From Hemiscyllium ocellatum (lineage: Eukaryota), in assembly GCF_020745735.1 (NCBI RefSeq), contig NC_083409.1, positions 14,665,873 to 14,729,872 on the forward strand: DNA of 64,000 bases. The letters run 5' to 3'. The position numbers and the translations under genes were made by a program. This document shows positions 5,784-63,926 of this stretch, piece by piece (position 1 is the stretch's first letter; each line of letters begins with the position of its first letter). The notes under the pieces are model-generated. The model was not told the DNA's origin. It did no database searches and saw nothing but the letters and a program-made list of their open reading frames with translations.

Positions 5784-5849
5784 GTGATAACTCCATGTAA
5801 TCCTTTTGTCCTACTTGTCAGTAATAATGTTGCAAACGTGATGCTGGTT

Positions 5850-6800
5850 GGAGTTAAAATACGTAGATTAAGTGAGTGAGTGACTCAACTTGTAAACAGT
5901 GGTCACTATCCTGACTTGGAAATCTGTCACTGCATCTCGGAAGTCCCTCCGTCATGAGATTGCAGGTCAAGCTCAGCACCATCTTGTCAAGGACAACCAG
6001 GAAGGGGCAATAAGTGCTGGCCAGCCAGTGACATCCACATTTCATGAATGAATAAAAAACATTCCTCTATGCTCATTGAGTACCAAGGAACTCCATTTTA
6101 ACTCTAAACTCCTCAATGACCATTTTTTAAAATGACTCACAGGGTCTGGGCATCGCCGGCTGGCCAGCATTTAATCACCGATCCTAGTTGCTTTTGAGAA
6201 ACTGGTAAGCTATCTTTTGTAACCACTGCAGTCCATGCTCTGTAGGTAGACCCACAATGTCCTTTTGGGAAGGAATTCCCGGAATTTGATATCGCAATCC
6301 TGAAGAAACAATGATATTTTTTCAAGTCAGAACGATGAGTGGCTTGGAGGGGAACTTGCAGGTTGCGGTCTGCTGCTCTTGTCCTTCTTGATCTAAATGG
6401 TCACAGATTCGGAAGGATCTGGCTGAAGATCTCTGAATTTCAGCAATGCATCTTGTAGGTTGTACACACTACTGCTACTGAGTGGAGAGTGGTGGAGGGC
6501 ATGGCTGCTTGCAGATGTGGTGCCAATGAAGTGGGCTGCTTTGTCTTGGATGTGGTGAGCTTTTTGTGTGTTACTGGAGCTGCACTCCTCCAGGCAAGTG
6601 GGGCGTATTCCATCAGACTCCTGACTTGTACTTTGTACTCGGTGGATTTGCGATGGAGGTGCGTTATACTCCACAGTATTCCAAGCCTCTGACCTACCCT
6701 TGTAACCCAAAGTATTTATATACTGAGTCCAGATGAGTTTCAGGTCCATGGTAACCCCCATGATGTTCATCGTGGAAGATTCAGTGAGGGTAACACAAGG
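5850..6800. mobile_element. L2/CR1-clade LINE fragments
   Basis: 3'-tail-like sequence ending 'catgaatgaataaaaaa' near 6050. Minus-strand late-ORF2-like segment at ~6390-6770. Confidence 0.55.
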
Positions 6801-13500: not shown

Positions 13501-14545
13501 GAGAGTTGGGATAAAAGGTTCTTTTTCAGAATGGCAGCCAGTCACAAGTGGTGTCCCGCAGGATTCAGTGTTGGGGCCGCAGCTATTCACTTTATATATT
13601 AATGATCTGGATAAAGGGAACTGGGGGCTTTCTGGTAAAGTTCACCGATGATAAGTAGTTAGGTGGACAGGCAGGATGTTCTGAGGAGGTGGGGAGGCTA
13701 CAGAAAGATTTAGACAGTTTTGGAGGATGATCCAGGAAATGGCTGATGAAATTCAACGTGAGCAAATGCGAGGCCTTGCACTTTGGAAAAAAGAATACAG
13801 GCATGGACTATTTTTTAAACGGTGAAAAAATTCATAAAGCCAAAGTACAAAGGGATCTGAGAGTGCTAGACCAGGATTCTCTCAAAGTTGACTTATAGGT
13901 TGAGTCCGTGGTTAAGAAAGCAAATGTAATGTTGTCATTTATCTCAAGAGGATTGGAATATAAAAGCATTGATGTGCTTCTGAGACTTGATAAAGCTCTA
14001 GTTAGGCCCCATTTAGAAAGCTGTGTCCAATTTCGTGCCCCACACCTCAGGAAGGACATACTGGCACTAGTGTGTGTCCAGCAGAGACTCTCACGGATGA
14101 TCCCTGGAATGGTAGGCCTAACATACGATGAACGGCTGAGGAGCCTGGTATTGTATTCATTAGAGTTTAGAAGGTAGAAGGGAGATTTAATAGAAATATA
14201 CAAGATAAAGCATGGCTTAGAAAGGGTGGAAGCTAGGAAGTTGTTCCCGTTAGGCAGGGAAACTAGGGCCCATGCGCACAGCCTTAGAATGAGAGGGCGT
14301 CAATTTAGAATGGAAATGCTGAAACATTTCTTCAACCAGAATTCATTGCCATGGAGCACAGTGGAGGCTGGGATGTTGGGTGTCTTCAAGGCAGCGATTG
14401 ATAAATTCTTGATCCCACAAGGAATTAAGGGCTATGGAGAGAGTGCGGGTAAGTGGAGTTGAAATGCCCATCAGCCCTGACTAAATGGCGGAGTGGACTC
14501 AATGGGCCGAATGGCCTTACTTCCACTCCACTGTCTTATGGTCTT
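10570..14545 (+). mobile_element. Near full-length decayed CR1 LINE (5'UTR, ORF1 zinc-finger/coiled coil, ORF2 APE-RT, tail)
   Basis: ORF1 start MARQLMCCSC...HICSKC at 11133. Endonuclease motifs ALYLNAHSI, GITETWLQ and GSSDHN. RT region [13 protein letters not shown]. Tail near 14460-14540. Many stops and frameshifts. Confidence 0.92.
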
Positions 14546-14584
14546 CATTTTTAAACTTCTCTATCAAATCTCATTTTTAAAGTT

Positions 14585-15305
14585 CTGTATCCAGTCACTA
14601 GTTTATACAGTTAATGGTCGGGCCCTGGGGTGTGTTGCTGAACAAAGAGACCTCGGGATGCAAGTGCACAGTTCCTTGAAAGTGGAGTTGCAGGTAGAAA
14701 GGGTGGTGAAGAAGGCATTTGGCATGCTTGCCTTCATTGGTCAGAACATTGACTGTCGTGGTTGAAGTGTTACTTTGCAGCTGTACAGAACATTAGTGAG
14801 GCCTCGTCTGGAATACTGCATACAGTTCTGATCACCTTTCTGTAGGAAGGATGTTCAATCTGAGAGAGTGCAGAAAAGATTTACAAGGATGTTGCTGGGA
14901 CTGAGTTGCAGGGAGAGGCTGAATAGGCTGAAATATTTTTCCCATGGAGCATTGGAGGCTGAAGGGTTTTTGTAGAGGCTTATTAAATCATGAGGGGCAT
15001 GGATAGGGTGAATAGCCAAGATTTTTTTCCCAGGGCAGGGAAGTTGTAAACTAGAGGGCATAGGTTTGAGGTGAGAGGGATAACTTTTCAGGCGCAGTGA
15101 GCTGCACACATGGAATGAGCTGCCCGAGTGGTGGAGAGGGGAATAATTACAACATGTACCTTTTAAAGGCATCGGGATGGGTACATGAATAGGAAGGGTT
15201 GAGAAGGATTTGGGCCAAATGCTGGCAAACTGGGACTAGGTCACATTGGGATATCTGGTTGGTGCGGATGACCTGGGTCTGTTGTATACCTGACTCTATG
15301 ACCCC
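14585..15305 (+). mobile_element. CR1 LINE 3' fragment
   Basis: QRDLGMQVHSSLKV...AFGMLAFIGQ motif followed by a typical CR1 tail. Confidence 0.85.
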
Positions 15306-15787
15306 ATGAATTTTGATGTCAATGCTGAATCAACCTTTTGAGATAAAATATTTCATGGTCAGAGCTATCTGGAATTTAATGTCTTTTTTTAAAAAAAATG
15401 CATTTGTAATGAAGTCGATCTGTTTACTCTGTGTGAAAAAGAAAGAGAATGGATCATTATTTTTAAAGAGGAAATGATGGCTAAAGGTTGCTTTGACATC
15501 AAACTTGTACACTTGCTGCTGCAGAATATTATATGTTCATTCAGAATATAATCTGTTCTGTTGGGTGAGTTTTTGAGATGTGCCTTAAAGCAGTTTAGTG
15601 GGTGAGAGATTTCTATGAAGTATTGAGTATTGTTGGAATAGAGAACTGCCACATATACTGTGATCCGACCCCCATGCTGTAAGTTTTCAAACAATTAAAT
15701 CACTGCCGATTCATATTCAATCCCCTTTTGTATGTGAAATGTGATCTTTGTTGTGCTTCCCACTTCCCTATCTCTATCTACTGAGGA

Positions 15788-17114: not shown

Positions 17115-18801
17115 AGCAATCTGATCAAAATCACCAGTGACAAAAATCTCACTGAGGCCCATGTGCTCTCCTTTCCTGAGCATTTCAGCAGCAGGGAATG
17201 AATGAAGGGGAGAAGCTTTCTCGAAGTGTTTCACCAAGTATCAGTGTGGATGATGAAATCAGTGAGCGGCTGGGTGAGAAATACTCTCCCAGCTGTGGTA
17301 GCGTACATTCAGAACAACTTGGAGACTTGAAATCACCAACTGAGAAGAGCAAAGTGTTGCCAGCAATGAGGAACAGACTCCCATGCCATCACACTGTCTC
17401 TGTCCGTGTCACACTCAAACAGCCATGTCCCTGAAACCGATGAGCTGCCTGAATTCCAAATTGGTGCAAGAATTTTAGTTAGTAGCATCCAACTAGGGAC
17501 ACTTTGCTTCAAGGGCAGAACTAGCTTTCCCAATGGCTTTTGGGCTAGTGCAGGATAAGCCAGAAGGCAGTAATAATGGGACATGTGATGGAGGTTGAGC
17601 CAGAGCTTTCAAAGGAATTAGCAGAACTGTAGGCGGAAGAGTTTGGTCAAAGTAATACTCCTGGAGGGCAAGTAGACTTTAAGCTCTGTTCATTTAAAAA
17701 CAATTTGAATGATCAAAATGTAAGTAATCAGTTTTCTGAACCAAGTAAGTCTGACTTGCTGCACATTATTAATGAATCTAGCAAGGCAGTGGTAACCTTT
17801 GGAGATGACCAAAATTGAAAAGAGAGCTTGTCCAAGTCTGGTGAGGAGGAACGATTGGCAAACTTGAGTGAAGACCAGAATGTAGAAAACATGAACTGGA
17901 ATGATGTGTTCATAGAGAAGGCATCCAAGGCAGTACTGGAGACAGAAACCAAAATCAATACCAATGTGTCTGTGTGTTCTTCCAGTGCACAATGGGAGAC
18001 GTTTTCACTAAATATCCATGAGATCTCTTCATCTCCTCTGTTGGATTTACTGAACAGGGAAAAGGACCAACTTGAGGCTCAATTTAAAGTACCATTCCTC
18101 GAGCCTGAATCTGAGGAAATCCATGAGGAGCCACGTGGACATTAAAAGAGAGGAACCAAAGGGCGATTGTGAGGATAGTGAAAACTTTAACGGAGATGAT
18201 CTGAAGAGCAGTGACTCAAAGGCCAATTCTTTGGTTGATATGATACAGGTAGACAATCTTTTAACCCGAATCCCGAAATCCGAAAAGCTCAAGTCCGAAG
18301 TTGTTTTTGTGAAGTTATTCCTCATTAACATGGCTGTTTGACGCATCACTCTGATGTGATGTAGTGGGGGATGGGGGGAGCTGCACTGGCAAACCACAAC
18401 TCTGTTTCATCGCCCCATTTTACAGAGTGAGTGTGCTCCTCCGGTATGATTTTAATCATTTCACCATCAAACTGTCACTTATTCTGAAATTTGAAGAGTT
18501 CTGAATTCCGAGAACCAGCTGGTTCCGAGCATTTCAGAGAAAGGATTGTGTACCTGAGCTATCTCCCTTTGTCAAGGCCACTGTTGGACAATTACATGAC
18601 ATCACAAAGTCTCGAGCTGAGAAGATCCAACTTACTAATCAAGGATTACAGTTCAAATTGGATGTTGAATCCTGACCCAGGTCATCTTCCAAGAATCGAG
18701 AGGAGGAACACAAGACTGTTATCCAATTGGAGACATCTGAAAGAGATTACAGTGATGATGATAAGGAGGAAGTATTATCTCCAGATCTTTGTCCTCGACC
18801 T
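17115..18801 (+). pseudogene. CEP350: CEP350 copy B, 3' part of the large CAP-Gly exon, degraded
   Basis: Motifs DDEISERLGEK...LKSPTE, ELPEFQIGARILV...GTLCFKGRTSFPNGFW / DKPEGSNNGTCDG (frameshifted CAP-Gly), SPLLDLLNREKDQLEAQ and EKIQLTNQ...KEEVLSPDLCPRP. Ends at a GCAAGT donor. 5' boundary approximate. Confidence 0.9.
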
Positions 18802-20477
18802 GCAAGTATTAATTTTGAACCTGTTTTGGGATGGATTTGAATTTCAAGAATTGGAGATGTGTTATTGGTCTCGAAGCATTGATGCAATTGTTTTATTAAT
18901 AATTCCAGAGCTGCTTAAATTCCCATGTTTTAACATACTGACAGGATTGTCATTGTTTCTGTCACAATATGTCAAAATACAACTCCACTTTTTTCAGGCA
19001 CATTTTGCAGGTCATCATTTTCGGAAATTACCCTGAGTGTTCCCCTTTACTGAGGACACTTTACAAAAAGACTGTTGAATTGTTAATTATATTTGTGGGT
19101 GATAAAATCCAGCTTTGGGCAATATTAATAAAATTTCTGGTGTTTCGGTGTTTTCCACCTTGCCCATCAATTCTCAAAATATGTGTAAGTATGCTTAATT
19201 ATTTCTCAAGATTTAGTGACCATTTCCACTGTGTAATTATTGAGTTTAGAACTGAAGGATTGCTTTTGAAATCCAAAACTTTTACTCTTGCACTTTTCTG
19301 TCGTTCCGAAAAGGGAGGAAGTGTTTTTAAAGATGTTCTTTTAAACTAAGTTTTTGATGATGCTTTTCAATCTCTTGCTAAATCAGTTCACACACACTTT
19401 ATCCAGCGTCGTGTTCTGAAGCAAAGTCCCGAGCCTGAATGACCATCTGATTAGAAGAACAGAAGTGTTTATGGTTTGCACGTATTAACATTGATTGGAC
19501 AAGCAGCTCTTTTGATGAAAATGCTTGACAAGTTCTCATACTGTCCATTCCTTTCTGAGCATTCAATGTAGGAAGTCATTGAAATAGGTGCTTGAGTCAG
19601 TTTGATTTGACACAGCAACATCCTGACTAAACTGACACATGCTTTTCTGATTTGTCAATATTTGTGTTTCCCTGTAAAGTGCAGGAATAAAAAGGGGTGC
19701 AGCAGTCAACTGAAAGTGATCTGATTTTGGAAAGCTGAAGCTCAGAACGTTCAGTCTGAAATCGTTCATTCCCCTAAGTACACGACAGTTAGTAGATGAA
19801 GAGATTCTCCATACTCCAGGAAAGATTTGAACAGTCTGTATCAATTTCCTAAAATGGACATTATTTTCTCCATGGTAACTCGTAACTAGCCATATTTCTT
19901 GTGATTGCATTGTTTGAAGGATATTCACGGATTTCATCACAATGTATCTGACCCGAAACTGTTCAAAAGCTGTATTCTCCCCATCCTCCACACTCCATGA
20001 TAGTCAGCAGTGGGATCTCTCCCTTTGTGAGCCTCGTGAAGTATTGCTCAGTGTGTTGTGTTCTTTTCATAACAAATGTATTTTTAAAGCTCAGGAAGAC
20101 CACTTGGGATACTTTGCATCTTTGTAAAGATGATTTTTTTTTCCACCACCTTGATCAAGTCAAGTATTTTTAAAAATTTAAAATGAGTATAAAGCATTTC
20201 TCCAGACTCCATTAACTGAATTGTGTATTGAGTTTGAGTACTCAATCTGATAAAATATACTGTTTAATGTCACTCCATGTGGAAAGCTTAACTTTAATTA
20301 CATGGCTGAGAATAAATTGGAAATGAATTCCAGCCTGTGTCCAACTCGTCAGACATACTCTGAGATATCAAAAGAAGGTTTTTGTTTGTTTGTCTCCCTG
20401 TTTTCATGCTTTGATTTCAGTTTTGTTCCTGACCTTCAGTTTCTAGATTGACCAACAGTCTGTGTACTTTGCAACAG

Positions 20478-20860
20478 GGCAGCCCAGTGTTTGGCACAAG
20501 TGGGCAGGAAGAATTGGCCAAATGCCTGGCAGAGTTGGAATTGAGTCATGAGGCACTCGATGACCTGGTAGATGACCAAGATTGGTTTGATGAGGACTTT
20601 GGGCTGAGCTGTAGCAAAGTGCAGCATCCAGTGCAGGAGGCCCAGTCTCCACAGGATGGGCCTCTGAAAATCCAAGGGAACCTACTTTGCTGCAGCTCCT
20701 GATGCTTTAGAGGTTGAGAAGATGGTTCATGCAGTGGCTGAGGAAGTTGAAGGAACTTGGCCACGATCCAGGAAATCTACGAATACCCCTACAAATTCTT
20801 ATCTTGAGAATAAGAAATGGAAAGATGTAGACAGTGTGAGCAAAAGAGTTTTTTTGTGAG
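20478..20860 (+). pseudogene. CEP350: CEP350 copy B exon (GSPVFGTSGQEELAKCLAELELS...DDQDWFDEDFGLS), frameshifted
   Basis: CAG acceptor, GTGAG donor at 20861. 383 nt, a net -1 relative to copy A plus 144. TGA at 20700-20702. Confidence 0.92.
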
Positions 20861-21289
20861 GTGAGCTTCAGCTTTTGCGTTTGAACACAAAATTATTTTT
20901 TCTCAATTAAACAAGAAAGGTGTGAGTTAATAGTGCTCCACAGCAGCTCTGATTAATGATATGCATAACAGAGCATGTTAAAAACATTATCTCGATCCTG
21001 ATGACTGCATTGAATTCAATTTACCATTTTGCCCCTTCCATAAAAGTCCAAGGCCCCCTTTCTCCTCCACTGTTTGTACTCTCCCATTATTAATTTATCA
21101 TCATCAACCTCCTCCTCATCCTGTTATTCACTAAATCCCATCTGTCACAACTTTGCCGACTCTGAGAATCTATAGTTTCTGTTTCTATTTACATAATATC
21201 TAGTGTCTCTTCCAGTCACTCATTTTTTTGAATTCTTCTGTATCATCTGTCTTTCCATTGGTTGATAATACAACATATAATTATTAATC

Positions 21290-22487: not shown

Positions 22488-22987
22488 NNNNNNNNNNNNN
22501 NNNNNNNNNNNNNNNNNNNNNNNNNNNNNNNNNNNNNNNNNNNNNNNNNNNNNNNNNNNNNNNNNNNNNNNNNNNNNNNNNNNNNNNNNNNNNNNNNNNN
22601 NNNNNNNNNNNNNNNNNNNNNNNNNNNNNNNNNNNNNNNNNNNNNNNNNNNNNNNNNNNNNNNNNNNNNNNNNNNNNNNNNNNNNNNNNNNNNNNNNNNN
22701 NNNNNNNNNNNNNNNNNNNNNNNNNNNNNNNNNNNNNNNNNNNNNNNNNNNNNNNNNNNNNNNNNNNNNNNNNNNNNNNNNNNNNNNNNNNNNNNNNNNN
22801 NNNNNNNNNNNNNNNNNNNNNNNNNNNNNNNNNNNNNNNNNNNNNNNNNNNNNNNNNNNNNNNNNNNNNNNNNNNNNNNNNNNNNNNNNNNNNNNNNNNN
22901 NNNNNNNNNNNNNNNNNNNNNNNNNNNNNNNNNNNNNNNNNNNNNNNNNNNNNNNNNNNNNNNNNNNNNNNNNNNNNNNNNNNNNNN
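22488..22987. other. Assembly gap (500 N)
   Basis: Run of n characters. Confidence 1.
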
Positions 22988-23562
22988 GCCTCAGTAGTGA
23001 TGCTTCTGAGCAGCTTTTGATGGTGGACTTTGAAGTCCCTTACTCACGGTATATCCTGCATCATTCCCACCCTCAGTGCTCCCTCCAAGTGTTGTCAAAC
23101 ATGGAGGAGGACTGACTGCTCCGTTGAGGTTGGAGCGGAGGGCGGTGCTATGTGGTAATCAGCAGGAGGTTTCCTTCCCCATGTTTGACCTGCTGTCATG
23201 AGGCTTCATGGGTTCCATAGTTAATGGTGAGGACTCCCAGGGCAACTCCCTTCTGACTGTACACACCACTGTGTTGCTTTCCCTGCTTGGTCTATCCTGC
23301 CAGTTAAAAACTGAATGAGGGAACAATTCTGTGCAGGTTTCACAGCTTGGAGACAGAGCTGCTGCTGGATTCTGTTTCTAATCTCGAAGTGCAGGCGTGT
23401 GTGTTTGTGAGAGAGTGACTGACACTTTTTCCATCACCGTGCTGTTTCTGAAAAGAAAAATCCCAGAACCAGCCTCCTGTGCTGTCAGGTTCCAGGGAGA
23501 GCAGACAGTTCACAGTTTTCTCCCATCTCAGTAACAAACACCCAGCTGCTCCGAGCTCCTTC

Positions 23563-23577
23563 TTTCACTTCCTCTTT
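23563..23577 (-). promoter_or_regulatory. ETS-IRF composite element (PU.1/Spi-B + IRF4/8), candidate
   Basis: TTTCACTTCCTCTTT, reverse complement AAAGAGGAAGTGAAA. CAGCTG E-box at 23543-23548. Confidence 0.5.
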
Positions 23578-24359
23578 GGTGAATTTTCAACCTTGTGCTC
23601 TGACAGTCTTTGCAACTATTTTTTACACTGGGGCTTTCTGCTGTGGTCAGAATCTCTAATAATAAGTGTCTAATCAGTGACAATCACAGCAGCTAAGAGC
23701 AGTCAGGACTGAAAAGCCCGGACTCACTGTGTAACATATTGGGAAGATCAAAGCCATCCTCTTCATCTCCTGCTCCAAACTCCATCCCTCTCCCTGGGGG
23801 TCTGCTGCACAACCAGACCCTTTACAAACGTGGCCACATCTCTGAGAATGATCTGACCCCTATATCCTCCATATTATACAGACCAGCCACTGAAAATCTC
23901 AATCATGTCTGTGGGACTCCAAACATGACCATTCCAATGTTGTGCTAGCACACATCACAGCAATCGCCCTCCATAACCTTCAGTTCATCCCAAATTCTGA
24001 TGCCTGTATTCAAACTTGCATCAAGTCCTGTTCCCCCAACCCCCTGCACCCTGTATCTACATTGGCTCCTCTCCAGCAACTCCTTGATTGTCGAGTTCTC
24101 ATCCTTGTTCGCAAAACCCTCTCTGCCCTCCACCCTCCCTATCTCTGCCTCAGTCAGTGTGATCAGCAATCTTGGATGTACAGCTCTCTGTTTCTTCATC
24201 CAAGTCATTCAGAAATATCATAAAAAGCTGAGCTCCCAGCACAGATCCCTGGGGATACCACTATTCACATCTTCCTCACTGGAGGATGCACTCACTATTC
24301 TTCCTCTCTGCCTCCTACCTCCAAACTAATTCCTGACCAAAGACAAATACTTTTCTCTG

Positions 24360-41429: not shown

Positions 41430-43870
41430 CTGAAGAAAATTAGTTTTATTCGGGAAATGGTTTTGGAAAATTTATGGGATTAAAGTTTGATAAATCCGCA
41501 GGGACCAATAACCTACATTTCAGATTACTTCAGGAATTGCCCAAAAATTTTGGGAACATTGGTGTTCAAGATTCTATTGATTCTGGAACTTTCCCAGTGA
41601 CTGGAGAGTTGCGAATGTAACATCACTGTTTAAAATGGGAGGGAGAGAGAAAAGTGGGCAACCTGGACCAGTCAGCCTGGCATTGGTATTGGGAAAAATA
41701 GTCAAGTTCGTTGTGAAAGATTTAATCACTGGGCACGTGGAAGACAGTGATAGGATTAGACAGAGTCAGCATGGTTTGTGGAAAGGGAAATCATGCAGAA
41801 CAAATTGACTGGAATTGTTCGAGGATGGAATGAGCAGATTTGACAAGGGGGAGCCAACGGATGTGGTTTATCTGGAACCTTCAGAAGGCTTTTAAACAGT
41901 CCCACAGTAGAAATTAGCGAGTAAAAGTAAGACTCAATGGACTGGGGCAGTGTACTGACATGGATAGAGAAGTGGTTGGCAGGCTGGAAACAAAGAGTAA
42001 AAAAAAACAGACCTTTTCAGAAAAAGGTCTGTTTTTTTTACTCTTTGTTTCCAGCCTGCCAACCACTTCTCTATTCATGTCAGTAATGTTCATATTTGTT
42101 CATGGTTTAGATGAGGGAACTTAAGAGTAATATCTCCAATTTGCAGATGACACAAAGCTGGGTGGGAGGGGGAGCAGTGAAGAAGATGCAGAGATGCCTG
42201 TGTCCGTGTATACCAGTCACTGAAAGTCAGCGTGTAGGTGCAGCAGGCAGTGCAGAAGGTAAATGATATGTTACCTTTATAGTGAGAGAATTTGCGTACA
42301 GGAACAGGGATGTCTTGCTGTAATTGTATGGGGCCTTAGTGAGTCCACTCCTGAATATTCAAACCAAAACTGGTTCAGTGACAGGAGACAGAGGGTGGAG
42401 GCAGAAATTTGTTTATGTGACTGGGCCCAGTGTGCAGTGGGATACCACAGGGATCAGTGCTGGGTCCCTTATTGTTCAGGATGTATTGAAACAATGAAGA
42501 TGAGAATGTGAGAGGTGAGGGGTGGGGGTGAGTGGATGATGACTGAGTTTTTGGATGACACGAGGTTTGGCAGATGGTTGACAATGAGGAAGAAGGTCTT
42601 GGGTGACACGAGGATCTAACTGGATTGGTCAGATGGGCAGATCAGAGTCAGATGGAACTTACCCCTGATAAATGTGAGGTGATGAACTTTGGACAATGTA
42701 ACAGGTGAATAAAGTATTGATGAAATCATATGGGACACTTGCCTTTATCATTTCAGGTATAGATGAGAAGACCAGGGAAGATATGTTGGAGCTATTCAGA
42801 ATTTTTGTTAGGCCACAGCTGGAGTACTGTGTGCAGTTCTGGTCACCACGCAATCGGAAGGATGGGATTGTATTGGAGGGGGTGCAGAGAATAGTCACCA
42901 GGATGTTGCTTGGGATGAAGCATTTCAGCGATGAAGAGAGGCTGGATAAACTCGGGTTGTTTTCTTTGAAGCAGAGAAGGTTGAGAGGACCTGATAGAGG
43001 TGTAAACGGCTATGAGGGGAATGGACACAATGAATAGAAAGCAGTTGTTCCTCTTCTTCGGAGTTGGCACACATTCACTGTGAAAGACAGGAGCTTCATA
43101 GGGGATTTGAAGAGGAGATTTTCACCCAGAGGGTGGTGGGGGTCTGGTTTGCATTGTCTGGGCTGGTAGTTGAGGAGGACTTTTAAAAGTACTTGGATTA
43201 ACCCTTGAAATATCATAACATTTAAAGCTATGGGCCTTGTGTTGGAAATTTGGATGAATGCAGGTTTACTGTAGTTTGGATGGTACAGGTACAATGGGTC
43301 GAAGGGCCTCTTCTGTACTGTGCGATTTTACGATTGTATTGTGTGCAGTTTTGGTCTACTTATCTGAGGAAAGATGTTCTGGCTGTGGAGGGAGGGCAGC
43401 GAAGGTTTACCAGGCTGACTCCTGGGATGACAGCAATTAGACTTAGATCTGATGAGAAACTGGACCAGTTAGGATTATATTCACTGGAGGTTAGAAGATT
43501 ATGGGGAGTCACACTGAAAACTCTAGAATCCTAACAGGACAAGACAGGATGTTCCTGATGACGAAGGAGTCCAGAATCAAGGATTAAAGTTTAAGGATAC
43601 GGGAAAGGACATTTAGAGCTGAGATGGAGAGAAATATTTTCATTCTACAGGAAGCCTGTAGACGTTTCTGTCACTGAAAGCAGTTCAGCTCAAACCACTG
43701 AATGTTTTCCAGAAAGGGCACAATACAGTTCTTAGAATGAAAGGGATCAAAGGTTATGGGGATGAAGCAGGAACAGGCAGCTGAGTTGGATGATCAGCCA
43801 TGATCATATTGAATGGCAGAACAGGCTCGAAGGGCTGAATGGCCTATTCCTGCTCCGAGTTTCACTGTTT
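41430..43870 (+). mobile_element. Nested CR1 fragments
   Basis: Multiple RT C-terminal motifs (VRPQLEYCVQFWSP) and tails. Confidence 0.8.
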
Positions 43871-44474
43871 GAGAGATTGTTCATCAACGTGGAACCATAT
43901 TGAATAAGAGAAAAAACATTTGCCTTGGGTTAGGAATTAGTTTGGAGATAGGAGACAGAGTGAGGGAATAATGTGTGTGTCCTCAAATGAGCAAGAGGTG
44001 AATAGTGGTGTGCCCAGGGATCCGTCCTGGGACTTTAGCATTTCATAATATTTCTGAATGACTTGGATGAAGGAATAGAGAGCCATATATCCAAGATTGC
44101 TGACCACACTGAGTGAGGCAGCTAGGAGGAGGTTACAGAGATGGGGAGGGTCGATGGACAGGGAGGGACTTCAGAACAAGGACGAGAATTTGAAAATCGA
44201 GGTGTTATTGGACCGGAGCCAATGTCGCTCAGTGAGGACAGTGGGGGATGGGGATGGGATTTGTTGCGAGTTCGGATTCGGGCAGCAGAGTTTTGGTGTG
44301 AGCTGAAGTTTACAGAGGGCAGTGGCTGTGATGTGGCCCAAGACAACATTAGAATGGTCATGTTTGGAGTCCCAAAGCAACGAGTGGGACTTTCAGTGAG
44401 TGATCTCTGTGCTGTGGAGGATTTGGGGCTCAGATCAGCCTCAAAGATGAGGCCAAGATTTTAAGGAATCTGGT

Positions 44475-44700
44475 ATGAAATAAAAGCCGAAAAAGCTGCA
44501 GATGCTGCAAATGAGGAACAAAAACAGAAATTGCTGGAAAAGCTCGGCAGGTCTGGCACCATCTGTGGAGAGAAAGCAGAGTTAAAATTTTGGGACGTGA
44601 ACCTTCTCAGAACTGTTCTGAGGAAGGGTCACTCGACCTGAAAGGTTAACTCTGATTTCTTTCCCCAGATGCTGCCAGACCTGCTGAGGTATTCTGTTTT
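44475..44700. mobile_element. Penelope-like inverted terminal pair with hammerhead motif at 44615-44650
   Basis: Palindromic centre cttctcagaac-tg-ttctgaggaag. Plus strand reads GTT-CTGAGGA-A-GGGTC/ACTC/GACCT-GAAAGGTT-AAC, with a degenerate mirror copy on the minus strand. Confidence 0.65.
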
Positions 44701-44955
44701 TGTAAAGAGTCTGGTTGAGCAGCAGACAGTGCTCAGGGAGAGGGATGGAGGTTGTACCGGGACCTGAAGGGGATGGCTTTGATCTTCCCAATGTGTTTCC
44801 CAGTGAGCCTGGCTACTCAGTCCTGACTGCTCTTAGCTGCTGTGATTGTCACTGATTGGACACTTATTATTAGAGATTCTGACCACAGCAGAAAGCCCCA
44901 GTGTAAAAAATAACTGCAAAGGCTGTCAGATCGCAAGGTTGAAACTTCACCAAGT

Positions 44956-44967
44956 GAGGAAGTGAAA
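44956..44967 (+). promoter_or_regulatory. ETS-IRF composite element (candidate Ig enhancer site)
   Basis: GAGGAAGTGAAA, with CAGCTG E-box at 44982-44987. Lies ~4.5 kb upstream of the V leader. Confidence 0.5.
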
Positions 44968-46569
44968 GAAGGAGCTCGGAGCAGCTGCACATTTGTTACT
45001 GAGATGGGAGAAAACTGTGAACTGTCTGCACTCCCTGGAATCTGACAGCACATAAGAACATTAAAACCAGGAGCAGGAGCAGGCTCTCTGGCCTCTTGGG
45101 CTGCTCTGCCATTCAGTAAGATCATGGCTGATCTTTTCATGGCATCAGCTCCCCCTTATCCACCTTTTCACCAAAACCCTTGATTCATTTACTGTTCAAA
45201 AAATTACCTAAATCAGCTTTAAAAACATTTACTGAGGAAACCTCAACGACTTCGCTGGGCAGGGAATTCCATAGATTCACCACCCTCTGGGTGAAGAAGT
45301 TCCTTCTCTATTTAGTCCTAAACCTGCACCCCCCCCCCCCCGCACCTGTGGTGTCTGTGAGTGATCCAATTATTCCCACTGCCCCCTCTCTCCCCATAAC
45401 CCAGCAAATCTTTCCTTTCAGCTCGATCTCCAGCTGCCTCTTGTTGACTTGGGTCCACAGCAGAGACTGTCCCTAACCTGGGCTCCAAGCTGGCATCTCA
45501 TTCATTCATTGGGAGGCAAACTGCCTGGGCTGGGAAATGGAGCTCAGGACCCTGAACATTCCCTCTCCCCTCCTGAGGGACATTTGATGCTGAGGTTTAA
45601 TTCTATGGAACTTTACAATATATGCCTACAATACACACTTCTCCATTCTGTGTGTAAAAGGCTGGAGCCTGCCAGCAGGATATTCAACTGCAGGAGCCGT
45701 CATCAATTTGACCAATTCTGACCACACCCACTCTCCGTAAACTTTCAACTAATTACTAAAATCAAATCTGTCAATCTCCTCCTTGGTATGAGACAGGGAA
45801 GGGGCCATTTCATTCCAGACAATTTGGAATTTATGGAGCACAGATGGAGTAAGCTGAGAGAGGACATCAGAATGTTGGAGTTTGGAGGTGGGATGAGCAG
45901 GAATAAGAGTTTCTGTGGTCAAGGGGCTGATGTAGTGCAGAGACAAACAATGTAGTGGAGATTGAAATAAGAGACCTAGGTGATGGAGAGGAAGTGGGGT
46001 TTGAAGCTCCAATACTGGAGGGTCCAGTGGGAAAGAAGCTCAGGCTTATTGCTGTCCATTGGACATTCCAGTGGGATGGAGGCCCATGTTTCCTGATCTC
46101 TGTTGGAGGTTCCAATTGAGTCCCATGGAATTGGAATGTTGGCATTTCTTGCAGCAATTGGAATCTTGGTATTTATTATAAAAGGACTGAATTACAGAAA
46201 TAAAGAAATATTGTGACAATTCTATTAGGCATTGGTGAGACCACATCTGAAGCATTGTGTCCAGTTGTGGTCTCCTTACTTGGTGAAGGATATGGTGGCA
46301 CTGGATTCAGTTCAGAGGATGTTCACCAGACTGATTCCCCGGATGAAAGGGCTGCCATATGAGGAATGGTTGAATAGCTAGGGCTTGTACTCACTGGAAT
46401 TCAGTTGTATGAAGGGGAGATCTGAGTGAAGTATATAAGATGCTAAAGGAGATTGATAGGGCAAGCATTGAACAGATGTACTCTCTTGTGGGCCAGTCTC
46501 GAACAAGAGGTCATAGACATAGAGTGAGAGGAGGTATGTTTAAAACTGAGATGAGGAGAAACTACAGGT

Positions 46570-46912
46570 GACAGAGTGGTGCAGTGGTGAGCACTGCTGC
46601 CTCACAGTGCCAGGGCCCCAGGTTCGACTCCACCCTCAGGCAACTGCATGGAGTTTGCACATTCTCCCCCTGTCTGTGTGAGCTTCATCTGTGTGCTCTG
46701 ATTTCCTCCCACAGTCTAATGATGTACACGTTCAGAGGATTGGCCATGCTAATTTACCCATAGTGTCCAGGAAAGTGTAGGTTAGATTCATTAGTCATGG
46801 GAAATATAGGGTTACAGGGAAAAGGTTCCAGAATGGCTCTGGGTGGAATGCTCTTTGAAGGGTTGGTGTGGACTTATTGGGCTGAATGGCCTGGTTTCAT
46901 ACTGTATGGAAT
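46570..46912 (+). mobile_element. HE1-type tRNA-derived SINE
   Basis: A-box tggtgcagtgg, B-box ggttcgactcc, V-SINE-like core and CR1-like tail. Confidence 0.8.
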
Positions 46913-47228
46913 CTGTTCCATTCCAACTACTTCTCGCAGAAGGTTGCGAATCTGTGGATGTCAGTGCGCACCATCATCTCCACCCCCCCTCCCCACTCCC
47001 CCCCCCTCCCCACCCCCTTCCTCAAGCACAGTGGAGGCAGAATCAATCAACAGATTCAAGAAAGAAACAGATATCTTTCTGATGAAAAGCAGGATAGAGG
47101 GCAATAGGTAGCCGTCTGGAAAGTGGAGAGGAGGTTAAGTTCAGCCATGATCATGTTAAATAGGAAACGGGTTTGATTACCTATTCCTGCTCCTCATTCC
47201 GAAGTTCAATCTTGCAATGAGATCCTTG

Positions 47229-47580
47229 TTTACTGGTCTGTATTGGAGGATCCATTCACAAAGAGTCACATCTTTACTGGTCTGTATTGGAGGAGCCAGT
47301 TTGAAGCTCGTCTATATTTACTGGTCTGCACTGGAGAGTTCAAAGAAATGGAGGCCTTTCTCTCCTGGTTTCTATTGGAGGGCCCAGTAGGAATAAGGTC
47401 CATGTTAACTAGGCTCTGCTCGAGTATTCAGTGGGAAATAGATCCATATTTACTGGTCTCCATTGGAGGCTCCAGCGGCAAAGATGCCTATGTTTAATGG
47501 TCTCTACTGGAGAGTTCTGTGGGAATGAATTCCATGCTTACTGGTCTCCACTGGACAGTCCAGTGGGACATGGATACTGT
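47229..47580. repeat. 44-bp minisatellite, 8 diverged units
   Basis: The tttactggtct motif or variants start at 47229, 47273, 47317, 47361, 47405, 47449, 47493 and 47537. Confidence 0.9.
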
Positions 47581-48039
47581 AGTGAGTGTGGGGCTCATTT
47601 CCTTTCTGTAGTAACTGTGTGATGGTCCAATCCTCATACCAATAAAACTGGAGCTTGACCATGGAAGGGAAAGGTGAGGGGAAAGGATTGGAACATGTTG
47701 TGAATGGATAGGATGGGTCAATGGGTCAGATCCTGTCCTATCCCTCCAGGTCATACTGATGGCCTGAGGATCTCCTCCCTCTGCTGGGCTTTCATGGAAT
47801 GAGGTTTGTGTCCAAACCAGTCCCCAGGAAGAATGGGCCAACAGCACAGAATTGCCCTTCATTTGACAAGAATCTGACCGTCTTCCTGAGAGAGGCCAAA
47901 CCCTGGTCAATGTGGGAAATGGGCCTTTATTCCAGGAGTAGACATACTCCTGGTGTCAAGGGTTAACATCCATTAGATTTGGAGGAGATATAACCTGTAT
48001 TTAACTTTTACCACTTGGGACCTTGTTGGAAAGGCAGAG

Positions 48040-48046
48040 AGTGTGC

Positions 48047-48082
<36 letters not shown>

Positions 48083-48345
48083 ATGTTGACGAGAGAGACA
48101 TAGAAGGGCAGGGTGTGAAAGTGAGAGAGAGCAGGATAAAGAATCTCAGGCAGTGTAAGATGAGTAAAAGCGGGGGAGAGAGAGAGGTAGAGAGAGGTAG
48201 AGATGGTGGAGTTGAAGAATAGAGATAGAGCGAGATAGAGTATGAGACAGTGTGACTGAGAGAGAGGGGACAGAGAGAGAGACAGACAGACAGAGTAGGT
48301 GTGAGACAAAGAGTAGAGGCAATCCAGTGAAAGAGAGAGACAGAC
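48040..48345. repeat. (GT)n(GA)n microsatellite and GA-rich low-complexity tract
   Basis: Direct reading. Confidence 0.9.
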
Positions 48346-48649
48346 GTGCAGAGATGTTCTGGTCACCATATTATGAGAAAGATATGACTGTACTCGAGAT
48401 GGTGCAAAGATTTCCCAGGATGCTGCCTGGCCTGGAGGGTGTGAGCTATGAGGAAGGATTGGAAAGTTTGGGATTGTTTCTCTTGGAGCAGTGAAGGTTG
48501 AGAGGGAACCTGCTGAAGGGCAAAAAGATTATGAGAGGCAGGGATAGAGTGGACAGGAAGGCAACTTTTTCCATGAATAGAGGGATCAATATCCAGGGAC
48601 AGAGATTGGAGATTACACAGACATACAAAGATAGAAATAGAGAGCAGGA

Positions 48650-48691
48650 GTAGGGTTAGGTTTAGGGTTAGGGTTAGGGTAAGGGTTAGGG
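48650..48691 (+). repeat. Interstitial telomeric repeat (TTAGGG)~6-7
   Basis: gtagggttaggtttagggttagggttagggtaagggttaggg inside a CR1 tail. Confidence 0.85.
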
Positions 48692-48829
48692 ATTGGCCCT
48701 GTGAGTCTGTTCTGCCATTCAATATGACCATGGCTGATCCTCTCCCTCAATGCCAAGCTGGGATTGATGTTGCTAGATCATTGATGATCAGTAGAGACTT
48801 GTTAAATGCTGTTCATGTCATTGAACTTT

Positions 48830-59890: not shown

Positions 59891-62424
59891 CACCCCCCCA
59901 CCTACCTGCAACCTCACTTCCAGTGAAGTATTCTTTTTTTTTGGATGAACTGAGAGTCTTCCAGTTGTGAAAGATGCCATTCCATGGACTTTTGGATGAA
60001 GAGCAGGCAGTTCCCCCTGGTGTCCCTAATCAATATTTATCCCCCAGTCAAAATCAATGAAAATCTGTTTCTCTTCTTTTTATCATATTGTGTTTGGGAT
60101 CTCGCTGTGCACAGTCTGCAGGAAAGATCCATTGGGACATCTTGATTTGGGGACAGGTGCTTCACAAATGCAAGTCTTTCTTTAAGTTTGAAGTCTCCTG
60201 ATCCGAACACTCACCCATTGTCTGTGCACTCTCACCTTCCGGGGGCATGGGGTCATTAGGAGCAGTGACCCAAAGGACACTGAGACTCTTTGCAGCCTCA
60301 CCCTTGACCTCAGCCCAGCAGTGTGCAGCAAGGTTTGAAATGTAATCTAGAACCTTCTACACAGACACCCCAATGTGACTCATTCCCGAAGTGTGTGGAT
60401 CCGAGTCTGCTCCAAAGTTCTCGGATAAATTTCTCCTGATCTGTGGGTGATCGGAGGTTTGTTAAAGAAGTATCAAGATCCGTCCCACTTTCCAGCTCTT
60501 GCTCCATAGCTCTGGAGGTTTCACTGTTTGAAGTGAATACCCAAGTGTTTTTTTCAAAGTGATGAGGGTTTCTGCCTCTCCCACCCTTTCAGGCTGTGAG
60601 TCCCACATCCCACCAAGCTCTGGGTGAAAACAAATACCCTCAACTCCCCTATAATCCTGCCCCCAACTGATTTCAATCTCTCCCCATGGTTATTGCCCTC
60701 TGTGCTGGTGGAAATCAGTCCTTCCTACCCACTCTGTCCAGGCCCCTCATCATTTTACACACCACCATCAAATCTCCCCTCAGCCTCCTGTGTTCCAACA
60801 AAAACACTCCCAGCCAATCCAAACATTCCTCAAAACTCAAAGTTCCCATTCCAGACAAACTCTTCCTCTGTCCTGGTCTCCTGTGGGATCACATCCTTCC
60901 TATAATGTGGTGACCAGAACCGTACACTGTTCTCTCACTGTGCTCTAACTGGGGTTTTATACAGTTCCAGAATAAACAAACTCCTTGCTTTCACAGTCAA
61001 CCAAAAATGAGATAAGGGAGGTGATGGTCTAATGGTGTTATTGCTGAGCTGTTAATCCAGAGATCCAGATAATGTTCTGGGGACCAGGGTTAGAATCCAG
61101 CAGATGGTGGCATTCAAATTCAATCAAAAAAAATCTGGAATTAAGTCTAATGACGACCATGAAACCATCTTTGATTGTCAGGAAAACGCCATCTGATTCC
61201 CTAATGTCCTTTCGGGAAAGAAACTGCCATCCTTACCATGTGACCCCAGACCCACAGCAATGTGGTTGACTCTAAACTGCCCTTTGGGTGATTAGCGATG
61301 GACAATAAATGCTGCCGATCCAGCAATTGCCCTCATTCCATCAAGGGAAAATGAAGAACAGTTTATCCCATGTGTCTTCTTACCACCTCACTGACCTGCA
61401 TTAAACACCATGGCCAAATCTTCCATCTCCACATGACTTGCAGTTTCAAATTCCTTCATTATCTGAGATACAGATAGAAACATCCAAACTACGAGCAACC
61501 GTAGGCCATTTGGCCCCCGAGCCTGCTCCACCATTCATTATGATCATGGCTGATTATCCAACACAGTCCCCTGTTCCTGCTTTCTCCCCACGTTCTTTGA
61601 TCCCTTTCATCCGAAGAACTACATCTAATTCCTTATTGAACACATACCGCATCTAATTCCCTCATGCTGGTAAAATGGATGAGAATTATTGGGTTGTTGT
61701 TTTTTGACCAGTATGGACACAATGGGCTGATGGGCCTTTTGGGTCTCTCTGACTCGATGATTCTATTATTATACTTTAAGAATAACTGAGTACCAAGGAC
61801 TGACCACTGTGTAACTACCTGTCATTCAGAAAAAGACTCATTCTTTCTGTCCTGTCTGCCAACCAGTTCCCAATCCATGTCAGTATGTGAACCCCAATCC
61901 TCTTGTTCATTTGGTCTAGATCTGGAAGCCACACCCTTACTAATTGTGGGACCAGATTCTGAACAGTCTGTCTCATCCTTCGAGGGCTCCTACTGCCCTG
62001 ACACTGATTTCCCATCATGCCATTGGTTCCGATCCACTTTTACCAAAGCACCACACAGTTTAGTAAAATGAAAACTTTTACACTTGCTCCATGGTTCTCC
62101 ATTTCCATCCCTACTCTCAATCTCACTGAGTTCTGATCACTGTCACGAAAATGCTCCCCCATTGACAGCCCTTCCAGCTGCCCAGAAACTGTCCCTTCTC
62201 TCTATGCTACTTCACCATCACCTTCTCAGGGGCAATTAGGGATGGGTAATAAATGTTGGCCCTGCCAGTGACACCCACATCCCAAGAAGCAATGTGAACA
62301 ATGCTTGGTCATTTGTTGGGTTTATTCTGTATTGACGACAAATGTTCAAAAAGATTGTATGGCCAGATTATGGTTGAATTCCCTTCCAGTGGCAGGAATT
62401 AAAATTGTTTCTCTTGTCTTTCAG

Positions 62425-62753
62425 GCCGTGAGAACTCTCAGCCCAAGCTGACCTTGCTGCCCCCCTCCCCGGAGCAGGTCAATGCCAAGGGCACTGCCAC
62501 CCTGGTGTGCCTTGCCAATCACTTCTATCCCGATGAGCTGGAGGTGCAGTGGAAGAAGGACGGTGCAGTCATTTCGGACGGGGTTCAGACCAGCAACTAC
62601 CTGCGAGCTTCAGACAGCACCTACAGTGTCAGCAGCCTGCTGACCCTCTCTGGGTCTGACTGGGAGTCCGACGCTCGCTTCTCCTGTGCCCTCACCCACG
62701 TGACCCTCCCCTCTCCCCTCAGCAAGAGCATCAGGAGATCAGAATGTGTGTAG
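62425..62753 (+). CDS. IGKC: Ig kappa-class constant exon (C1-set), intact
   Basis: TTTCAG acceptor in phase with J. (S)RENSQPKLTLLPPS...ATLVCLANHFYP...WKKDG...YSVSSLLTL...FSCALTH...RSECV-stop, with terminal interchain Cys. Resembles nurse shark NS4 C as recalled. Confidence 0.96.
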
Positions 62754-62898: not shown

Positions 62899-63614
62899 GC
62901 AGGTCATCGCGACAGTGTCAAGAGAGCTTTACACTGTGTCAAACCCCATGCTGTCCTTGTCCTGGGAATGTTTGATGGGGACAGGATTGCCTTGTTATGT
63001 TAGCTGCACAAAACAATGTGAACCTCAGAAGTCTCTGCTTCAGTAAACCAGATCTCCTTCCTGCTCAGCTGCCAGTTCCAGTTTAAGGTTTTGTCACTGT
63101 TTAAAGGGGCAGGATTCTCGTGTTATTGAGAAAATCTCTCCAAGTGTTTTCCTCAAGCTCCATTGGGGCTATGAATTTGAGCAGCTTCCTCTGTCTGGGC
63201 TGTTAATTGCAGTTGTTTCTTTTTCTGTGAATGTGAATGTGGAAAAGGGAATAAAGGTGAAAATTCAGTCTCTGTCTCCGTGTGCTTTGGAAATAACTGA
63301 CTTTCTCCTCCCCCATCTTTCAGTTGATTGGCTGTATTTCAGCAGGTCATTGTCACAATTGGTTACTTGGCCTGTCAATCAATTACAATCATCAATCATC
63401 AATCATTTTCAAATGATCCCTTTAATCAGGAATTTATGTAGATTCCAAAAAGAACAGAAACTGAAAGTTGTTGGGACTCAGTAAGTGCAATCTGATGCAT
63501 TCCCTCTTCACTCTGTTGGTACATGCCCAGCTGATGGGATCGAACTGTGCAATCTCTGCTGCATGTCGGATAGCCCCTGAAATAATCTTCGGCCAATCAC
63601 AGACATTGTTGGCT

Positions 63615-63926
63615 GTGTGCCTCTCTGAGTGTGAGTGTTTAACTCAATACTGCCTGTAGATGTCTCTCTGAGTGTGGCTGTGTTACTCAGAGACACACCA
63701 CAGACAGTATTCAGAAACACACCCACATTCGGTGAGACACCGATCCGCAGCATGGAGTGTGAGTGTGTTACTCAGTGCTGCCTGAAGGTGTCTCTCTCAG
63801 TGTGAGTGTGTTACTCTGTGCTGCCTGTAGGTGTCTCTCTCAATGTGAGTGTGTTACTCTGTGCTGCCTGTAGGTGTCTCTCTCAGTGTGAGTGTGTTAC
63901 TCTGTGCTGCCTGTAGGTGTCTCTGA
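63615..63926. repeat. 43-bp minisatellite downstream of C
   Basis: gagtgtgttactc...ctgcctgtaggtgtctctctca starts at 63761, 63804, 63847 and 63890. More diverged units lie at ~63615-63700. Confidence 0.92.

What the first reader, a model, noticed from the sequence alone, without database searches (positions are those of the whole stretch)
44815..45052. Candidate upstream B-cell enhancer: PU.1-IRF composite plus E-box conserved in both duplicate copies
Seen: GAGGAAGTGAAA (44956-44967) and CAGCTG (44982-44987). The paralog retains AAAGAGGAAGTGAAA (23563-23577, minus) and CAGCTG (23543-23548) despite substitutions around them. Established: GGAAnnGAAA EICE sites bound by PU.1/Spi-B with IRF4/8, together with E2A E-boxes, drive mammalian Ig kappa 3' and lambda enhancers. 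Inference: shark kappa miniclusters may carry their own 5' enhancer module, which would bear on how multicluster loci are activated independently. I know of no description of this element but cannot verify that.
Basis: partly seen in the sequence, partly recalled or inferred. Interest (0 to 1): 0.7.

Follow-up and report, generated by a model that had tools for sequence, protein, structure and literature searches.

The report
Conserved block upstream of shark kappa
A non-coding stretch of about 350 bases, 5 kb in front of a shark antibody light-chain gene, is better conserved than its neighbours and carries B-cell-enhancer-type sites, so it is a plausible but untested gene switch, though the two named motifs are no better conserved than the rest of the block.

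Summary
They sit in a 354-base block (44699-45052, +) with an inverted copy at 23478-23828.

**What supports a functional element**
- The block is not a transposon. Its summed contig depth is of the order of the V exon, about 100 times below the neighbouring repeats.
- It is not an abundant exon, an ORF or a structured RNA.
- It lies 4.7 kb upstream of the window's only kappa V. I found it 6.6 and 5.0 kb upstream of V in two Chiloscyllium punctatum clusters, one of which also has an inverted partner.
- Among the three close copies it changes at about 0.4 times the rate of its flanks.

**What weakens the reading**
- Comparisons with the diverged, germline-joined C. punctatum cluster give ratios of 0.74-1.06.
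- The PU.1/IRF site (8 of 10 columns invariant) and the E-box (6 of 6) are no better conserved than the block's background (62%). One copy has lost the IRF half-site.
- The window's second copy has no kappa gene on its side.
- No activity data exist.

**Verdict:** a real conserved non-coding module of kappa clusters. An enhancer is the best reading, at about 45%. The scan had already found this module in at least six other windows of this genome.

The parts
44699..45052 (+). Conserved non-coding block, plus copy. It is bounded on the 5' side by a hairpin repeat insertion and on the 3' side by a TE insertion.
   Evidence: 91% identical to the inverted copy, 95.2% to C. punctatum L001, and 79% and 77% to the two L002 copies.
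44815..45052 (+). The finding's own range, which is the better-conserved 3' two-thirds of the block.
   Evidence: Identity of 95.8%, 93.2%, 83.4% and 79.7% to L001, win-minus, L002+ and L002-. 62% of columns are invariant in five copies, against 46% in 44699-44814.
44956..44967 (+). ETS/IRF composite site (EICE), GGAAGTGAAA core at 44958-44967.
   Evidence: Perfect in 4 of 5 copies; L002-minus has GGAAATGAAG. 8 of 10 columns invariant.
44982..44987 (.). E-box CAGCTG, 14 bases after the EICE.
   Evidence: Invariant in all five copies, with the spacing unchanged.
44882..44887 (-). RUNX/CBF-type site (ACCACA on the + strand), inside the best-conserved stretch 44870-44910.
   Evidence: Intact in 4 of 5 copies. 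Invariant runs TAGAGAT and CTGACCA.
44864..44873 (+). MEF2-consensus match (YTAWWWWTAR).
   Evidence: Read from the sequence. Kept only in the three close copies, so this is weak.
44996..45021 (+). Second near-invariant stretch (TTACTGAGA ... GAGAAAA . TGTGAA), with no factor assigned.
   Evidence: Invariant runs in five copies.
23478..23828 (-). Inverted copy of the block. The EICE is at 23563-23577 and the E-box at 23543-23548.
   Evidence: The 490 bases beyond it (23477-22988) are unlike the plus side but match the sequence beyond the inverted copy in L002.
42733..44474 (+). Diverged colinear upstream arm of the inverted duplication. Its partner is 26635-23812 on the minus strand.
   Evidence: About 75% identity in three colinear pieces.
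44475..44698 (.). Hairpin (MITE-like) repeat inserted just 5' of the block. It is shared with L001.
   Evidence: Self-complementary over 44537-44694. Summed depth 366,000. 88% identical to L001.
45053..45350 (.). TE insertion just 3' of the block, shared with L001. Homology to L002 resumes at 45351.
   Evidence: Summed depth 82,000.
49738..50037 (+). V-kappa exon, the only V in the window, followed by a 12-spacer RSS.
   Evidence: Best protein matches are C. punctatum kappa chains at 87-88%.
50550..50585 (+). J-kappa segment.
62454..62753 (+). C-kappa exon.

Best explanation
The block is a cis-regulatory module of the shark kappa light-chain cluster, most likely a lymphoid enhancer. It lies about 5 kb upstream of the V promoter. 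It would be bound at the GGAAGTGAAA composite by a PU.1/Spi-B-type ETS factor together with IRF4/8. An E protein would bind the CAGCTG 14 bases downstream, and a RUNX factor the ACCACA 70 bases upstream. Together these would open and activate the cluster in B cells.

Shown here: the block exists, it is linked to kappa V in two species, it is not a TE, exon or structured RNA, and it changes more slowly than its flanks among close copies.

Inferred: that the sites are bound, that the block enhances transcription, and that the slow change reflects selection.
For: - **Position.** The block lies 4.7 kb upstream of V here, and 6.6 kb (L001) and 5.0 kb (L002) upstream of V in C. punctatum, in the same orientation as V.
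- **Slower change than the flanks.** Against L001 there are 17 mismatches in 353 block bases, compared with 12-14% in every flank of the same continuous 2.8-kb alignment. Those flanks include the two shared TE insertions that abut the block (Fisher p = 3e-6). Against the inverted copy the block is 91% identical and the flank 78% (p = 2e-7). Block-to-proximal-flank distance ratios are 0.40 and 0.44.
- **Rank within the locus.** Against the diverged cluster L002, the block's core (44875-45024, 84.7%) is the best-conserved upstream non-coding 150-base window. It ranks with the V promoter/leader (88%) and a J-C intron module (85%).
- **Copy level.** Summed depth is about twice that of V in two species and about 100 times below the TEs. 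31-mers of the block are held by at least five organisms, at roughly twice the share found for the surrounding 6.7 kb.
- **Sites.** The EICE-to-E-box spacing is fixed in five copies, although indels occur elsewhere in the block.
- **Known parallel.** The site set parallels the E-box, MEF2, PU.1-IRF4 and downstream E-box reported for human, mouse and chicken Ig lambda enhancers, and the E-box and PU.1-IRF4 of the kappa 3' enhancer (PMC3972084).
Against: - No functional evidence of any kind is available.
- The motifs are not better conserved than neighbouring bases: EICE 8/10 and E-box 6/6 against a 62% background, roughly p = 0.2 and 0.06.
- L002-minus has lost the IRF half-site and the RUNX site.
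- Constraint is not uniform. Distance ratios to the flank are 0.74 and 0.89 against the L002 copies, and 1.06 between the two L002 copies.
- Only five copies, effectively three lineages, could be compared.
- The EICE pattern as such occurs at chance frequency in the window.
- No NF-kB consensus was looked for systematically, and the MEF2 match is kept only in the close copies.
- The inverted copy in this window has no kappa gene on its side.
Confidence: 0.45

Rival explanations
1. The block has no function. The block is an uninterrupted stretch present twice per unit, whereas its flanks are broken up by lineage-specific TE insertions and indels that stop conversion tracts. Under this reading the ETS/IRF, E-box and RUNX matches are chance hits.
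For: - High identity ends exactly at the hairpin-repeat and TE insertions that flank the block in win+ and L001.
- The conservation excess is strong only within the close group. It vanishes between the two L002 arms (0.326 in the block against 0.308 in the flank).
- Four-point sums for the block favour grouping the two arms of each locus (0.421 against 0.464-0.469). Yet the sequence beyond the block's 3' end groups win-minus with L002-minus.
- The motifs are no better conserved than the block's background, and the EICE pattern occurs at chance frequency.
Against: - The proximal upstream flank is also uninterrupted and shared by all five copies, yet it is 22% diverged between the window's arms where the block is 9%.
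- The same 0.4 ratio appears in two separate comparisons.
- Even against L002 the block's core is conserved as well as promoter sequence.
- Conversion tracts confined repeatedly to the same 350 bases are less economical than constraint.
Confidence: 0.25
2. The block is functional but is not a classical transcriptional enhancer. It could be a recombination-accessibility or hypermutation-targeting element, as Ig enhancers act in the DIVAC assay. It could be a promoter of sterile transcripts, or a boundary between head-to-head units.
For: - The unjoined clusters (the window and L001) keep the block at 95%. The germline-joined cluster L002, which no longer needs V-J recombination, has the fastest-changing copies. 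This rests on a single joined cluster.
- The block occurs as an inverted pair between units in both species.
- Ig enhancers with this site set target hypermutation with little effect on transcription (PMC3972084).
Against: - No CTCF consensus lies in the block.
- An RNA run with massive kappa expression shows the block at depth 22-32, like other intergenic bins on both sides. That gives no sign of a start site there.
- The contrast between joined and unjoined clusters rests on one joined cluster, which is also simply the more distant paralogue.
Confidence: 0.2
3. The block is a fragment of a mobile element, an exon of an unannotated gene, or a structured RNA gene.
For: - A 107-aa ORF (44817-45140, minus strand) overlaps it.
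- It is multicopy.
- A low-depth RNA contig covers 44700-44932.
Against: - Summed depth is like V, not like the TEs. The only two copies in 64 kb both sit in colinear flanks.
- The ORF has no Pfam match and is broken by 1- and 8-base indels in other copies.
- RNA depth is about 30,000 times below V and equals that of other intergenic stretches.
- There is no Rfam match in the block, and the covariation term is unfavourable at +6.4 kcal/mol.
Confidence: 0.05

Closest known systems
Ig lambda enhancers of human, mouse and chicken (E-box, NF-kB, MEF2, PU.1-IRF4 composite, plus a downstream E-box in mammals; PMC3972084)
   Same: - A GGAA-nn-GAAA composite followed by an E-box.
- A MEF2-consensus match upstream in the close copies.
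- A compact module of a few hundred bases.
- Attached to a light-chain locus.
   Different: - It lies upstream of the V promoter instead of downstream of C.
- No NF-kB site was identified.
- The E-box is 14 bases from the composite, against about 50 in mammals.
- No sequence homology was tested or expected, and no activity has been measured.
- It is present once or twice per mini-cluster in a large array.
Mammalian Ig kappa 3' enhancer core (PU.1 with PIP/IRF4, and an E-box; PMC3972084 legend, PMC3291551)
   Same: A PU.1/IRF composite plus an E-protein site in a kappa-type locus. The GGAAGTGAAA core is a canonical composite sequence; that last point is from my own knowledge, not tested here.
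   Different: The position is 5' rather than 3'. Binding by PU.1 or IRF orthologues is untested. One diverged copy lacks the IRF half-site.
Teleost Ig enhancers (catfish IgH Emu3' and Atlantic cod light-chain enhancers; recalled from my own knowledge, not found in the searched library)
   Same: A non-mammalian Ig locus with cluster-type light chains, where E-box and ETS-type sites drive activity.
   Different: Those elements were defined by reporter assays and lie within or 3' of the clusters. The element here is defined only by conservation.

Membership tests
EICE-containing Ig light-chain enhancer | A GGAANNGAAA ETS/IRF composite is present. | tested here: met
   44958-44967, and in 4 of 5 copies.
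EICE-containing Ig light-chain enhancer | An E-protein E-box lies close to the composite. | tested here: met
   CAGCTG lies 14 bases downstream and is invariant in 5 copies.
EICE-containing Ig light-chain enhancer | The motifs are conserved above the surrounding sequence. | tested here: not met
   8/10 and 6/6 invariant columns against a 62% background, which is not significant.
EICE-containing Ig light-chain enhancer | The module is conserved above neutral flanks. | tested here: inconclusive
   The rate ratio is 0.40-0.44 among close copies (p = 3e-6 and 2e-7), but 0.74-1.06 in comparisons involving L002.
EICE-containing Ig light-chain enhancer | B-cell-specific enhancer activity and occupancy by PU.1/Spi-B, IRF4/8 and E2A. 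| not testable with these tools
   No chromatin or reporter data. All runs found were plain DNA or RNA contigs.
EICE-containing Ig light-chain enhancer | Location in the J-C intron or 3' of C, as in tetrapods. | tested here: not met
   It lies 4.7-6.6 kb upstream of V.
Transposable element | Copy number far above that of the host gene family, and copies outside the kappa context. | tested here: not met
   Summed depth is about twice that of V and about 100 times below the adjacent repeats. All five copies sit in colinear kappa-upstream context.
Protein-coding exon | An open frame kept across copies, a family match, and RNA coverage. | tested here: not met
   Frameshifting indels, no Pfam hit, and RNA depth at intergenic level.
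Structured RNA | An Rfam match or compensatory base changes. | tested here: not met
   No hit in the block, and the covariation term is unfavourable.
CTCF insulator | A CTCF core consensus. | tested here: not met
   No match with up to 2 mismatches in either copy.

The most novel reading that the evidence does not exclude
Each shark kappa mini-cluster carries its own upstream PU.1-IRF / E-protein / RUNX enhancer, placed as an inverted pair between head-to-head units. The light-chain enhancer logic of tetrapods would then predate the split of cartilaginous and bony vertebrates. Cluster-by-cluster activation, and so light-chain exclusion in a locus of about 200 clusters, would be set by stochastic firing of these modules. 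Constraint would relax once a cluster becomes germline-joined.
Probability: 0.35. Interest if true: 0.75.

Novelty: new variant of a known kind. Interest (0 to 1): 0.5.

Why it matters
No antibody-gene enhancer has been described for cartilaginous fish in the papers I could search. How a shark B cell chooses one or a few of its many Ig clusters is an open question. The heavy-chain exclusion study in the nurse shark proposes infrequent formation of a promoter-enhancer complex, but has no element to test (PMC2435157). A defined 350-base candidate, with three mutable sites and natural variants that lack one of them, makes that idea testable by reporter assays and chromatin profiling. The caution from this window is that conservation is uneven between clusters and that the named motifs carry no extra conservation signal.

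Tried and rejected
- **TE reading:** rejected on depth and context.
- **Exon or ORF reading:** rejected on indels, no Pfam match and intergenic-level RNA depth.
- **Structured RNA:** no Rfam hit and no covariation.
- **CTCF boundary:** no consensus.
- **A second kappa cluster on the minus side:** none found by tblastn with V, J and C, or by sensitive blastn.
- **Homology beyond the block's 3' end between the two window copies:** none.
- **DNA of other species:** chromosome-level assemblies of C. punctatum, Cetorhinus and Hemiscyllium, and the S. torazame assembly, returned no DNA because the files were too large. Only the older C. punctatum assembly did. Two of its four loci had too little upstream sequence.
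- **Exact-pattern scan of metagenome contigs** for host-derived copies: no match.
- **Read laying:** it returned only the 40 best-supported variant rows of 703. That gave no per-site paralogue profile. It showed only five private changes in this copy, at 44751, 44763, 44770, 44815 and 44955.
- **Run X26:** I suspected an RNA or chromatin library, but its depth profile tracks the plain DNA run.
- **ORF-overlap protein search:** I considered searching the protein collection with the ORF that overlaps the block to harvest more copies. I dropped it because no shark read-assembly proteins had appeared.

Full report
**Observation.** GAGGAAGTGAAA is at 44956-44967 and CAGCTG at 44982-44987. The inverted copy has AAAGAGGAAGTGAAA at 23563-23577 and CAGCTG at 23543-23548.

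Taken alone the motifs are unremarkable. GGAANNGAAA occurs 6 times in the window against 4.3 expected. The composite with the E-box occurs only in the two copies, which are one event. The two copies are 93% identical across 44815-45052. Eighteen motif bases would therefore all survive with probability of about 0.27, so nothing can be read from 'retained despite substitutions'.

**Anatomy of the window.**
- The window holds one kappa cluster on the plus strand: V at 49738-50037 with a 12-spacer RSS, J at 50550-50585 and C at 62454-62753.
- The best protein matches are Chiloscyllium punctatum kappa chains at 87-88%.
- The finding lies 4.7 kb upstream of V.
- It is the 3' part of a 354-base block, 44699-45052. 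That block is the best-conserved end of an inverted duplication, 42733-45052 against 26635-23478.
- The block is about 90% identical between the arms by BLAST (91% excluding gap columns in the global alignment). The colinear remainder is about 75%.
- In the plus copy a hairpin repeat (44475-44698) abuts the block on the 5' side and a TE (45053-45350) on the 3' side.
- The minus copy is followed by 490 bases unlike anything on the plus side, and then by an assembly gap at 22488-22987.
- No V, J, C or kappa promoter exists in 1-27000. The second copy is therefore not visibly part of a minicluster.

**What the block is not.** I laid contigs of four public runs on 44100-50099 at 85% likeness or more.

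| Stretch | Summed depth, DNA of the window's species |
|---|---|
| Block | 1690-2413 |
| V exon | 912-1149 |
| Proximal flank | 458-642 |
| Hairpin repeat | 366,000 |
| TE at 45100 | 82,000 |
| SINE-like repeat at 46500 | 517,000 |

- A second species gave the same proportions: 10,900-15,400 for the block against 5,300-6,600 for V. The tool warns that depth is not copy number. Even so, the block belongs with the V genes and not with the repeats.
- Run X16 is real lymphoid RNA. V depth is about 900,000, the leader intron is spliced at 49546>49733, and there are V-J joined ends. Yet it shows the block at 22-32, the same as other intergenic stretches on both sides. The block is therefore neither an abundant exon nor a visible start site.
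- The 107-aa ORF across the block has no Pfam match and is broken by 1- and 8-base indels in other copies.
- There is no Rfam match in the block and no covariation.
- There is no CTCF consensus.

**Related loci.** Chromosome-level shark assemblies (and the S. torazame assembly) returned no DNA. The older C. punctatum assembly did.
- L001 is colinear with the window from 43045 to beyond J, including the same hairpin and TE insertions. Its block, at 3268-3615, lies 6.6 kb upstream of V.
- L002 is a more distant cluster: V is 80% and C 87% identical to the window's. Its V and J are fused in the germline. It has the block 5.0 kb upstream of V at 4945-5284, and an inverted copy 3.6 kb further up at 1356-996.
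- The sequence beyond that inverted copy matches the sequence beyond the window's minus copy. The inverted pair is therefore an old feature of the unit.
- Sequence words of the block are held by runs of at least five organisms. One related species holds about twice the share of block words (0.43-0.47) that it holds for the surrounding 6.7 kb (0.22-0.24).

**Is it conserved more than its surroundings?** Among close copies, yes.
- Against L001 the block has 17 mismatches in 353 bases. Every flank in the same continuous alignment has 12-14% mismatches, including the two shared TE insertions that abut the block (Fisher p = 3e-6).
- Between the window's two arms the block is 91% identical and the flank 78% (p = 2e-7).
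- Measured against the 120-140 bases just 5' of the block, which all five copies share, the distance ratios are as follows:

| Comparison | Block/flank distance ratio |
|---|---|
| Window plus vs window minus | 0.40 |
| Window plus vs L001 | 0.44 |
| Window plus vs L002 plus | 0.74 |
| Window plus vs L002 minus | 0.89 |
| L002 plus vs L002 minus | 1.06 |

- Even so, against L002 the block's core (44875-45024, 84.7%) is the best upstream non-coding 150-base window. It ranks with the promoter/leader (88%) and a J-C intron module (85%).
- Constraint is therefore real among the close copies and weak or absent in the germline-joined cluster.

**Motif level.** This uses five copies, effectively three lineages.
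- In the finding's range 62% of columns are invariant. The EICE has 8 of 10 invariant and the E-box 6 of 6. Binomial estimates are about 0.2 and 0.06, so neither is significant.
- The EICE is perfect in four copies and reads GGAAATGAAG in L002-minus, which also lacks the RUNX site. The MEF2 match is kept only in the three close copies.
- The best-conserved stretches are 44870-44910, around the RUNX-type ACCACA, and 44996-45021, to which I could assign no factor.
- The EICE-to-E-box spacing of 14 bases is unchanged in all copies.

**Selection or homogenisation?**
- Four-point sums for the block weakly group the two arms of each locus (0.421 against 0.464-0.469). The flank gives the same weak preference (0.531 against 0.553-0.574).
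- The high-identity stretch ends exactly at the insertions that flank it.
- Gene conversion in a large array could therefore produce part of the signal.
- Against that, the uninterrupted proximal flank has diverged 22% where the block has diverged 9%. The same 0.4 ratio also appears in two separate comparisons.

I rate constraint as more likely than conversion alone, but I cannot exclude conversion.

**Comparison with what is known.**
- Human, mouse and chicken Ig lambda enhancers share E-box, NF-kB, MEF2 and PU.1-IRF4 sites, with a further E-box downstream in mammals. The kappa 3' enhancer has E-box, NF-kB and PU.1-IRF4 sites. Mutating these sites abolishes activity (PMC3972084; PMC3291551).
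- The shark block has the composite, a nearby E-box, a RUNX site and a weak MEF2 match in the same order. However, it lies upstream of V, I identified no NF-kB site, and it has no measured activity. It works like these enhancers on paper; membership is untested.
- I found no description of an Ig enhancer in cartilaginous fish in the searchable library. The shark heavy-chain exclusion paper invokes a promoter-enhancer complex without naming an element (PMC2435157).

**Relation to the scan.** The scan has already reported this same module from at least six other windows of this genome, with follow-ups reaching much the same verdict. My tests were made independently on this window and on C. punctatum. 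They agree on the existence, position and non-TE nature of the block. They add four cautions:
- The motifs are not better conserved than the block.
- Constraint is uneven and is lost in a germline-joined cluster.
- Conversion is a live alternative.
- This window's inverted copy has no gene.

**Verdict.** This is a real conserved non-coding module of kappa clusters.

| Reading | Confidence |
|---|---|
| Enhancer | about 0.45 |
| Another cis function | about 0.2 |
| Homogenised neutral sequence | about 0.25 |
| TE, exon or structured RNA | about 0.05 |

Noticed in passing
window 50770-51260: A second conserved non-coding module lies just downstream of J in the J-C intron. It is 96.7% identical to L001 and 84-85% to the diverged cluster L002, the same rank as the upstream block. 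It contains TGTGGT (RUNX type) at 50826-50831, an EICE-like GGAACTGAAG on the minus strand just upstream of it, near 50740, and a (CAG)n run at 50954-50985. It could be an intronic-enhancer counterpart.
   Followed up: partly
L002 10500-10580 (C. punctatum BEZZ01000502.1): V and J are fused in the germline with no RSS, giving a germline-joined kappa cluster. Both of its block copies are the fastest-changing of the five.
   Followed up: partly
window 44886-44913: The best-conserved part of the block reads like a weak 12-spacer RSS: CACAGCA, 12 bases, then GTAAAAAAT. It is kept in 4 of 5 copies. This may be chance, since cryptic RSS are common.
   Followed up: no
window 44537-44694: A hairpin (MITE-like) repeat with enormous summed contig depth (366,000) in two shark species, also present in RNA contigs. 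It gives weak sub-threshold matches to miRNA precursor families (mir-4524, 25.7 bits against a 68-bit cut-off).
   Followed up: partly
window 3401-5188 and 19385-21229: Direct duplication at 82-92% identity with a period of about 16 kb, left of the assembly gap. ORFs there (for example 17828-18145) have no Pfam match. I did not work out what this region is.
   Followed up: partly
window 63587-63924: A tandem array of a 43-base unit, with up to 96-98% identity between copies, lies about 850 bases downstream of the C-kappa exon.
   Followed up: no
window 50585-62454: The J-C intron is about 12 kb here and only about 3.6 kb in L002. The excess is SINE and LINE insertions, among them several copies of a tRNA-like SINE at 53546-59180.
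   Followed up: no
window 44751, 44763, 44770, 44815, 44955: At these five block positions nearly all other contigs of the species, and of a related species, carry another base. They are private changes of this copy. 44955 lies just 5' of the ETS core.
   Followed up: partly
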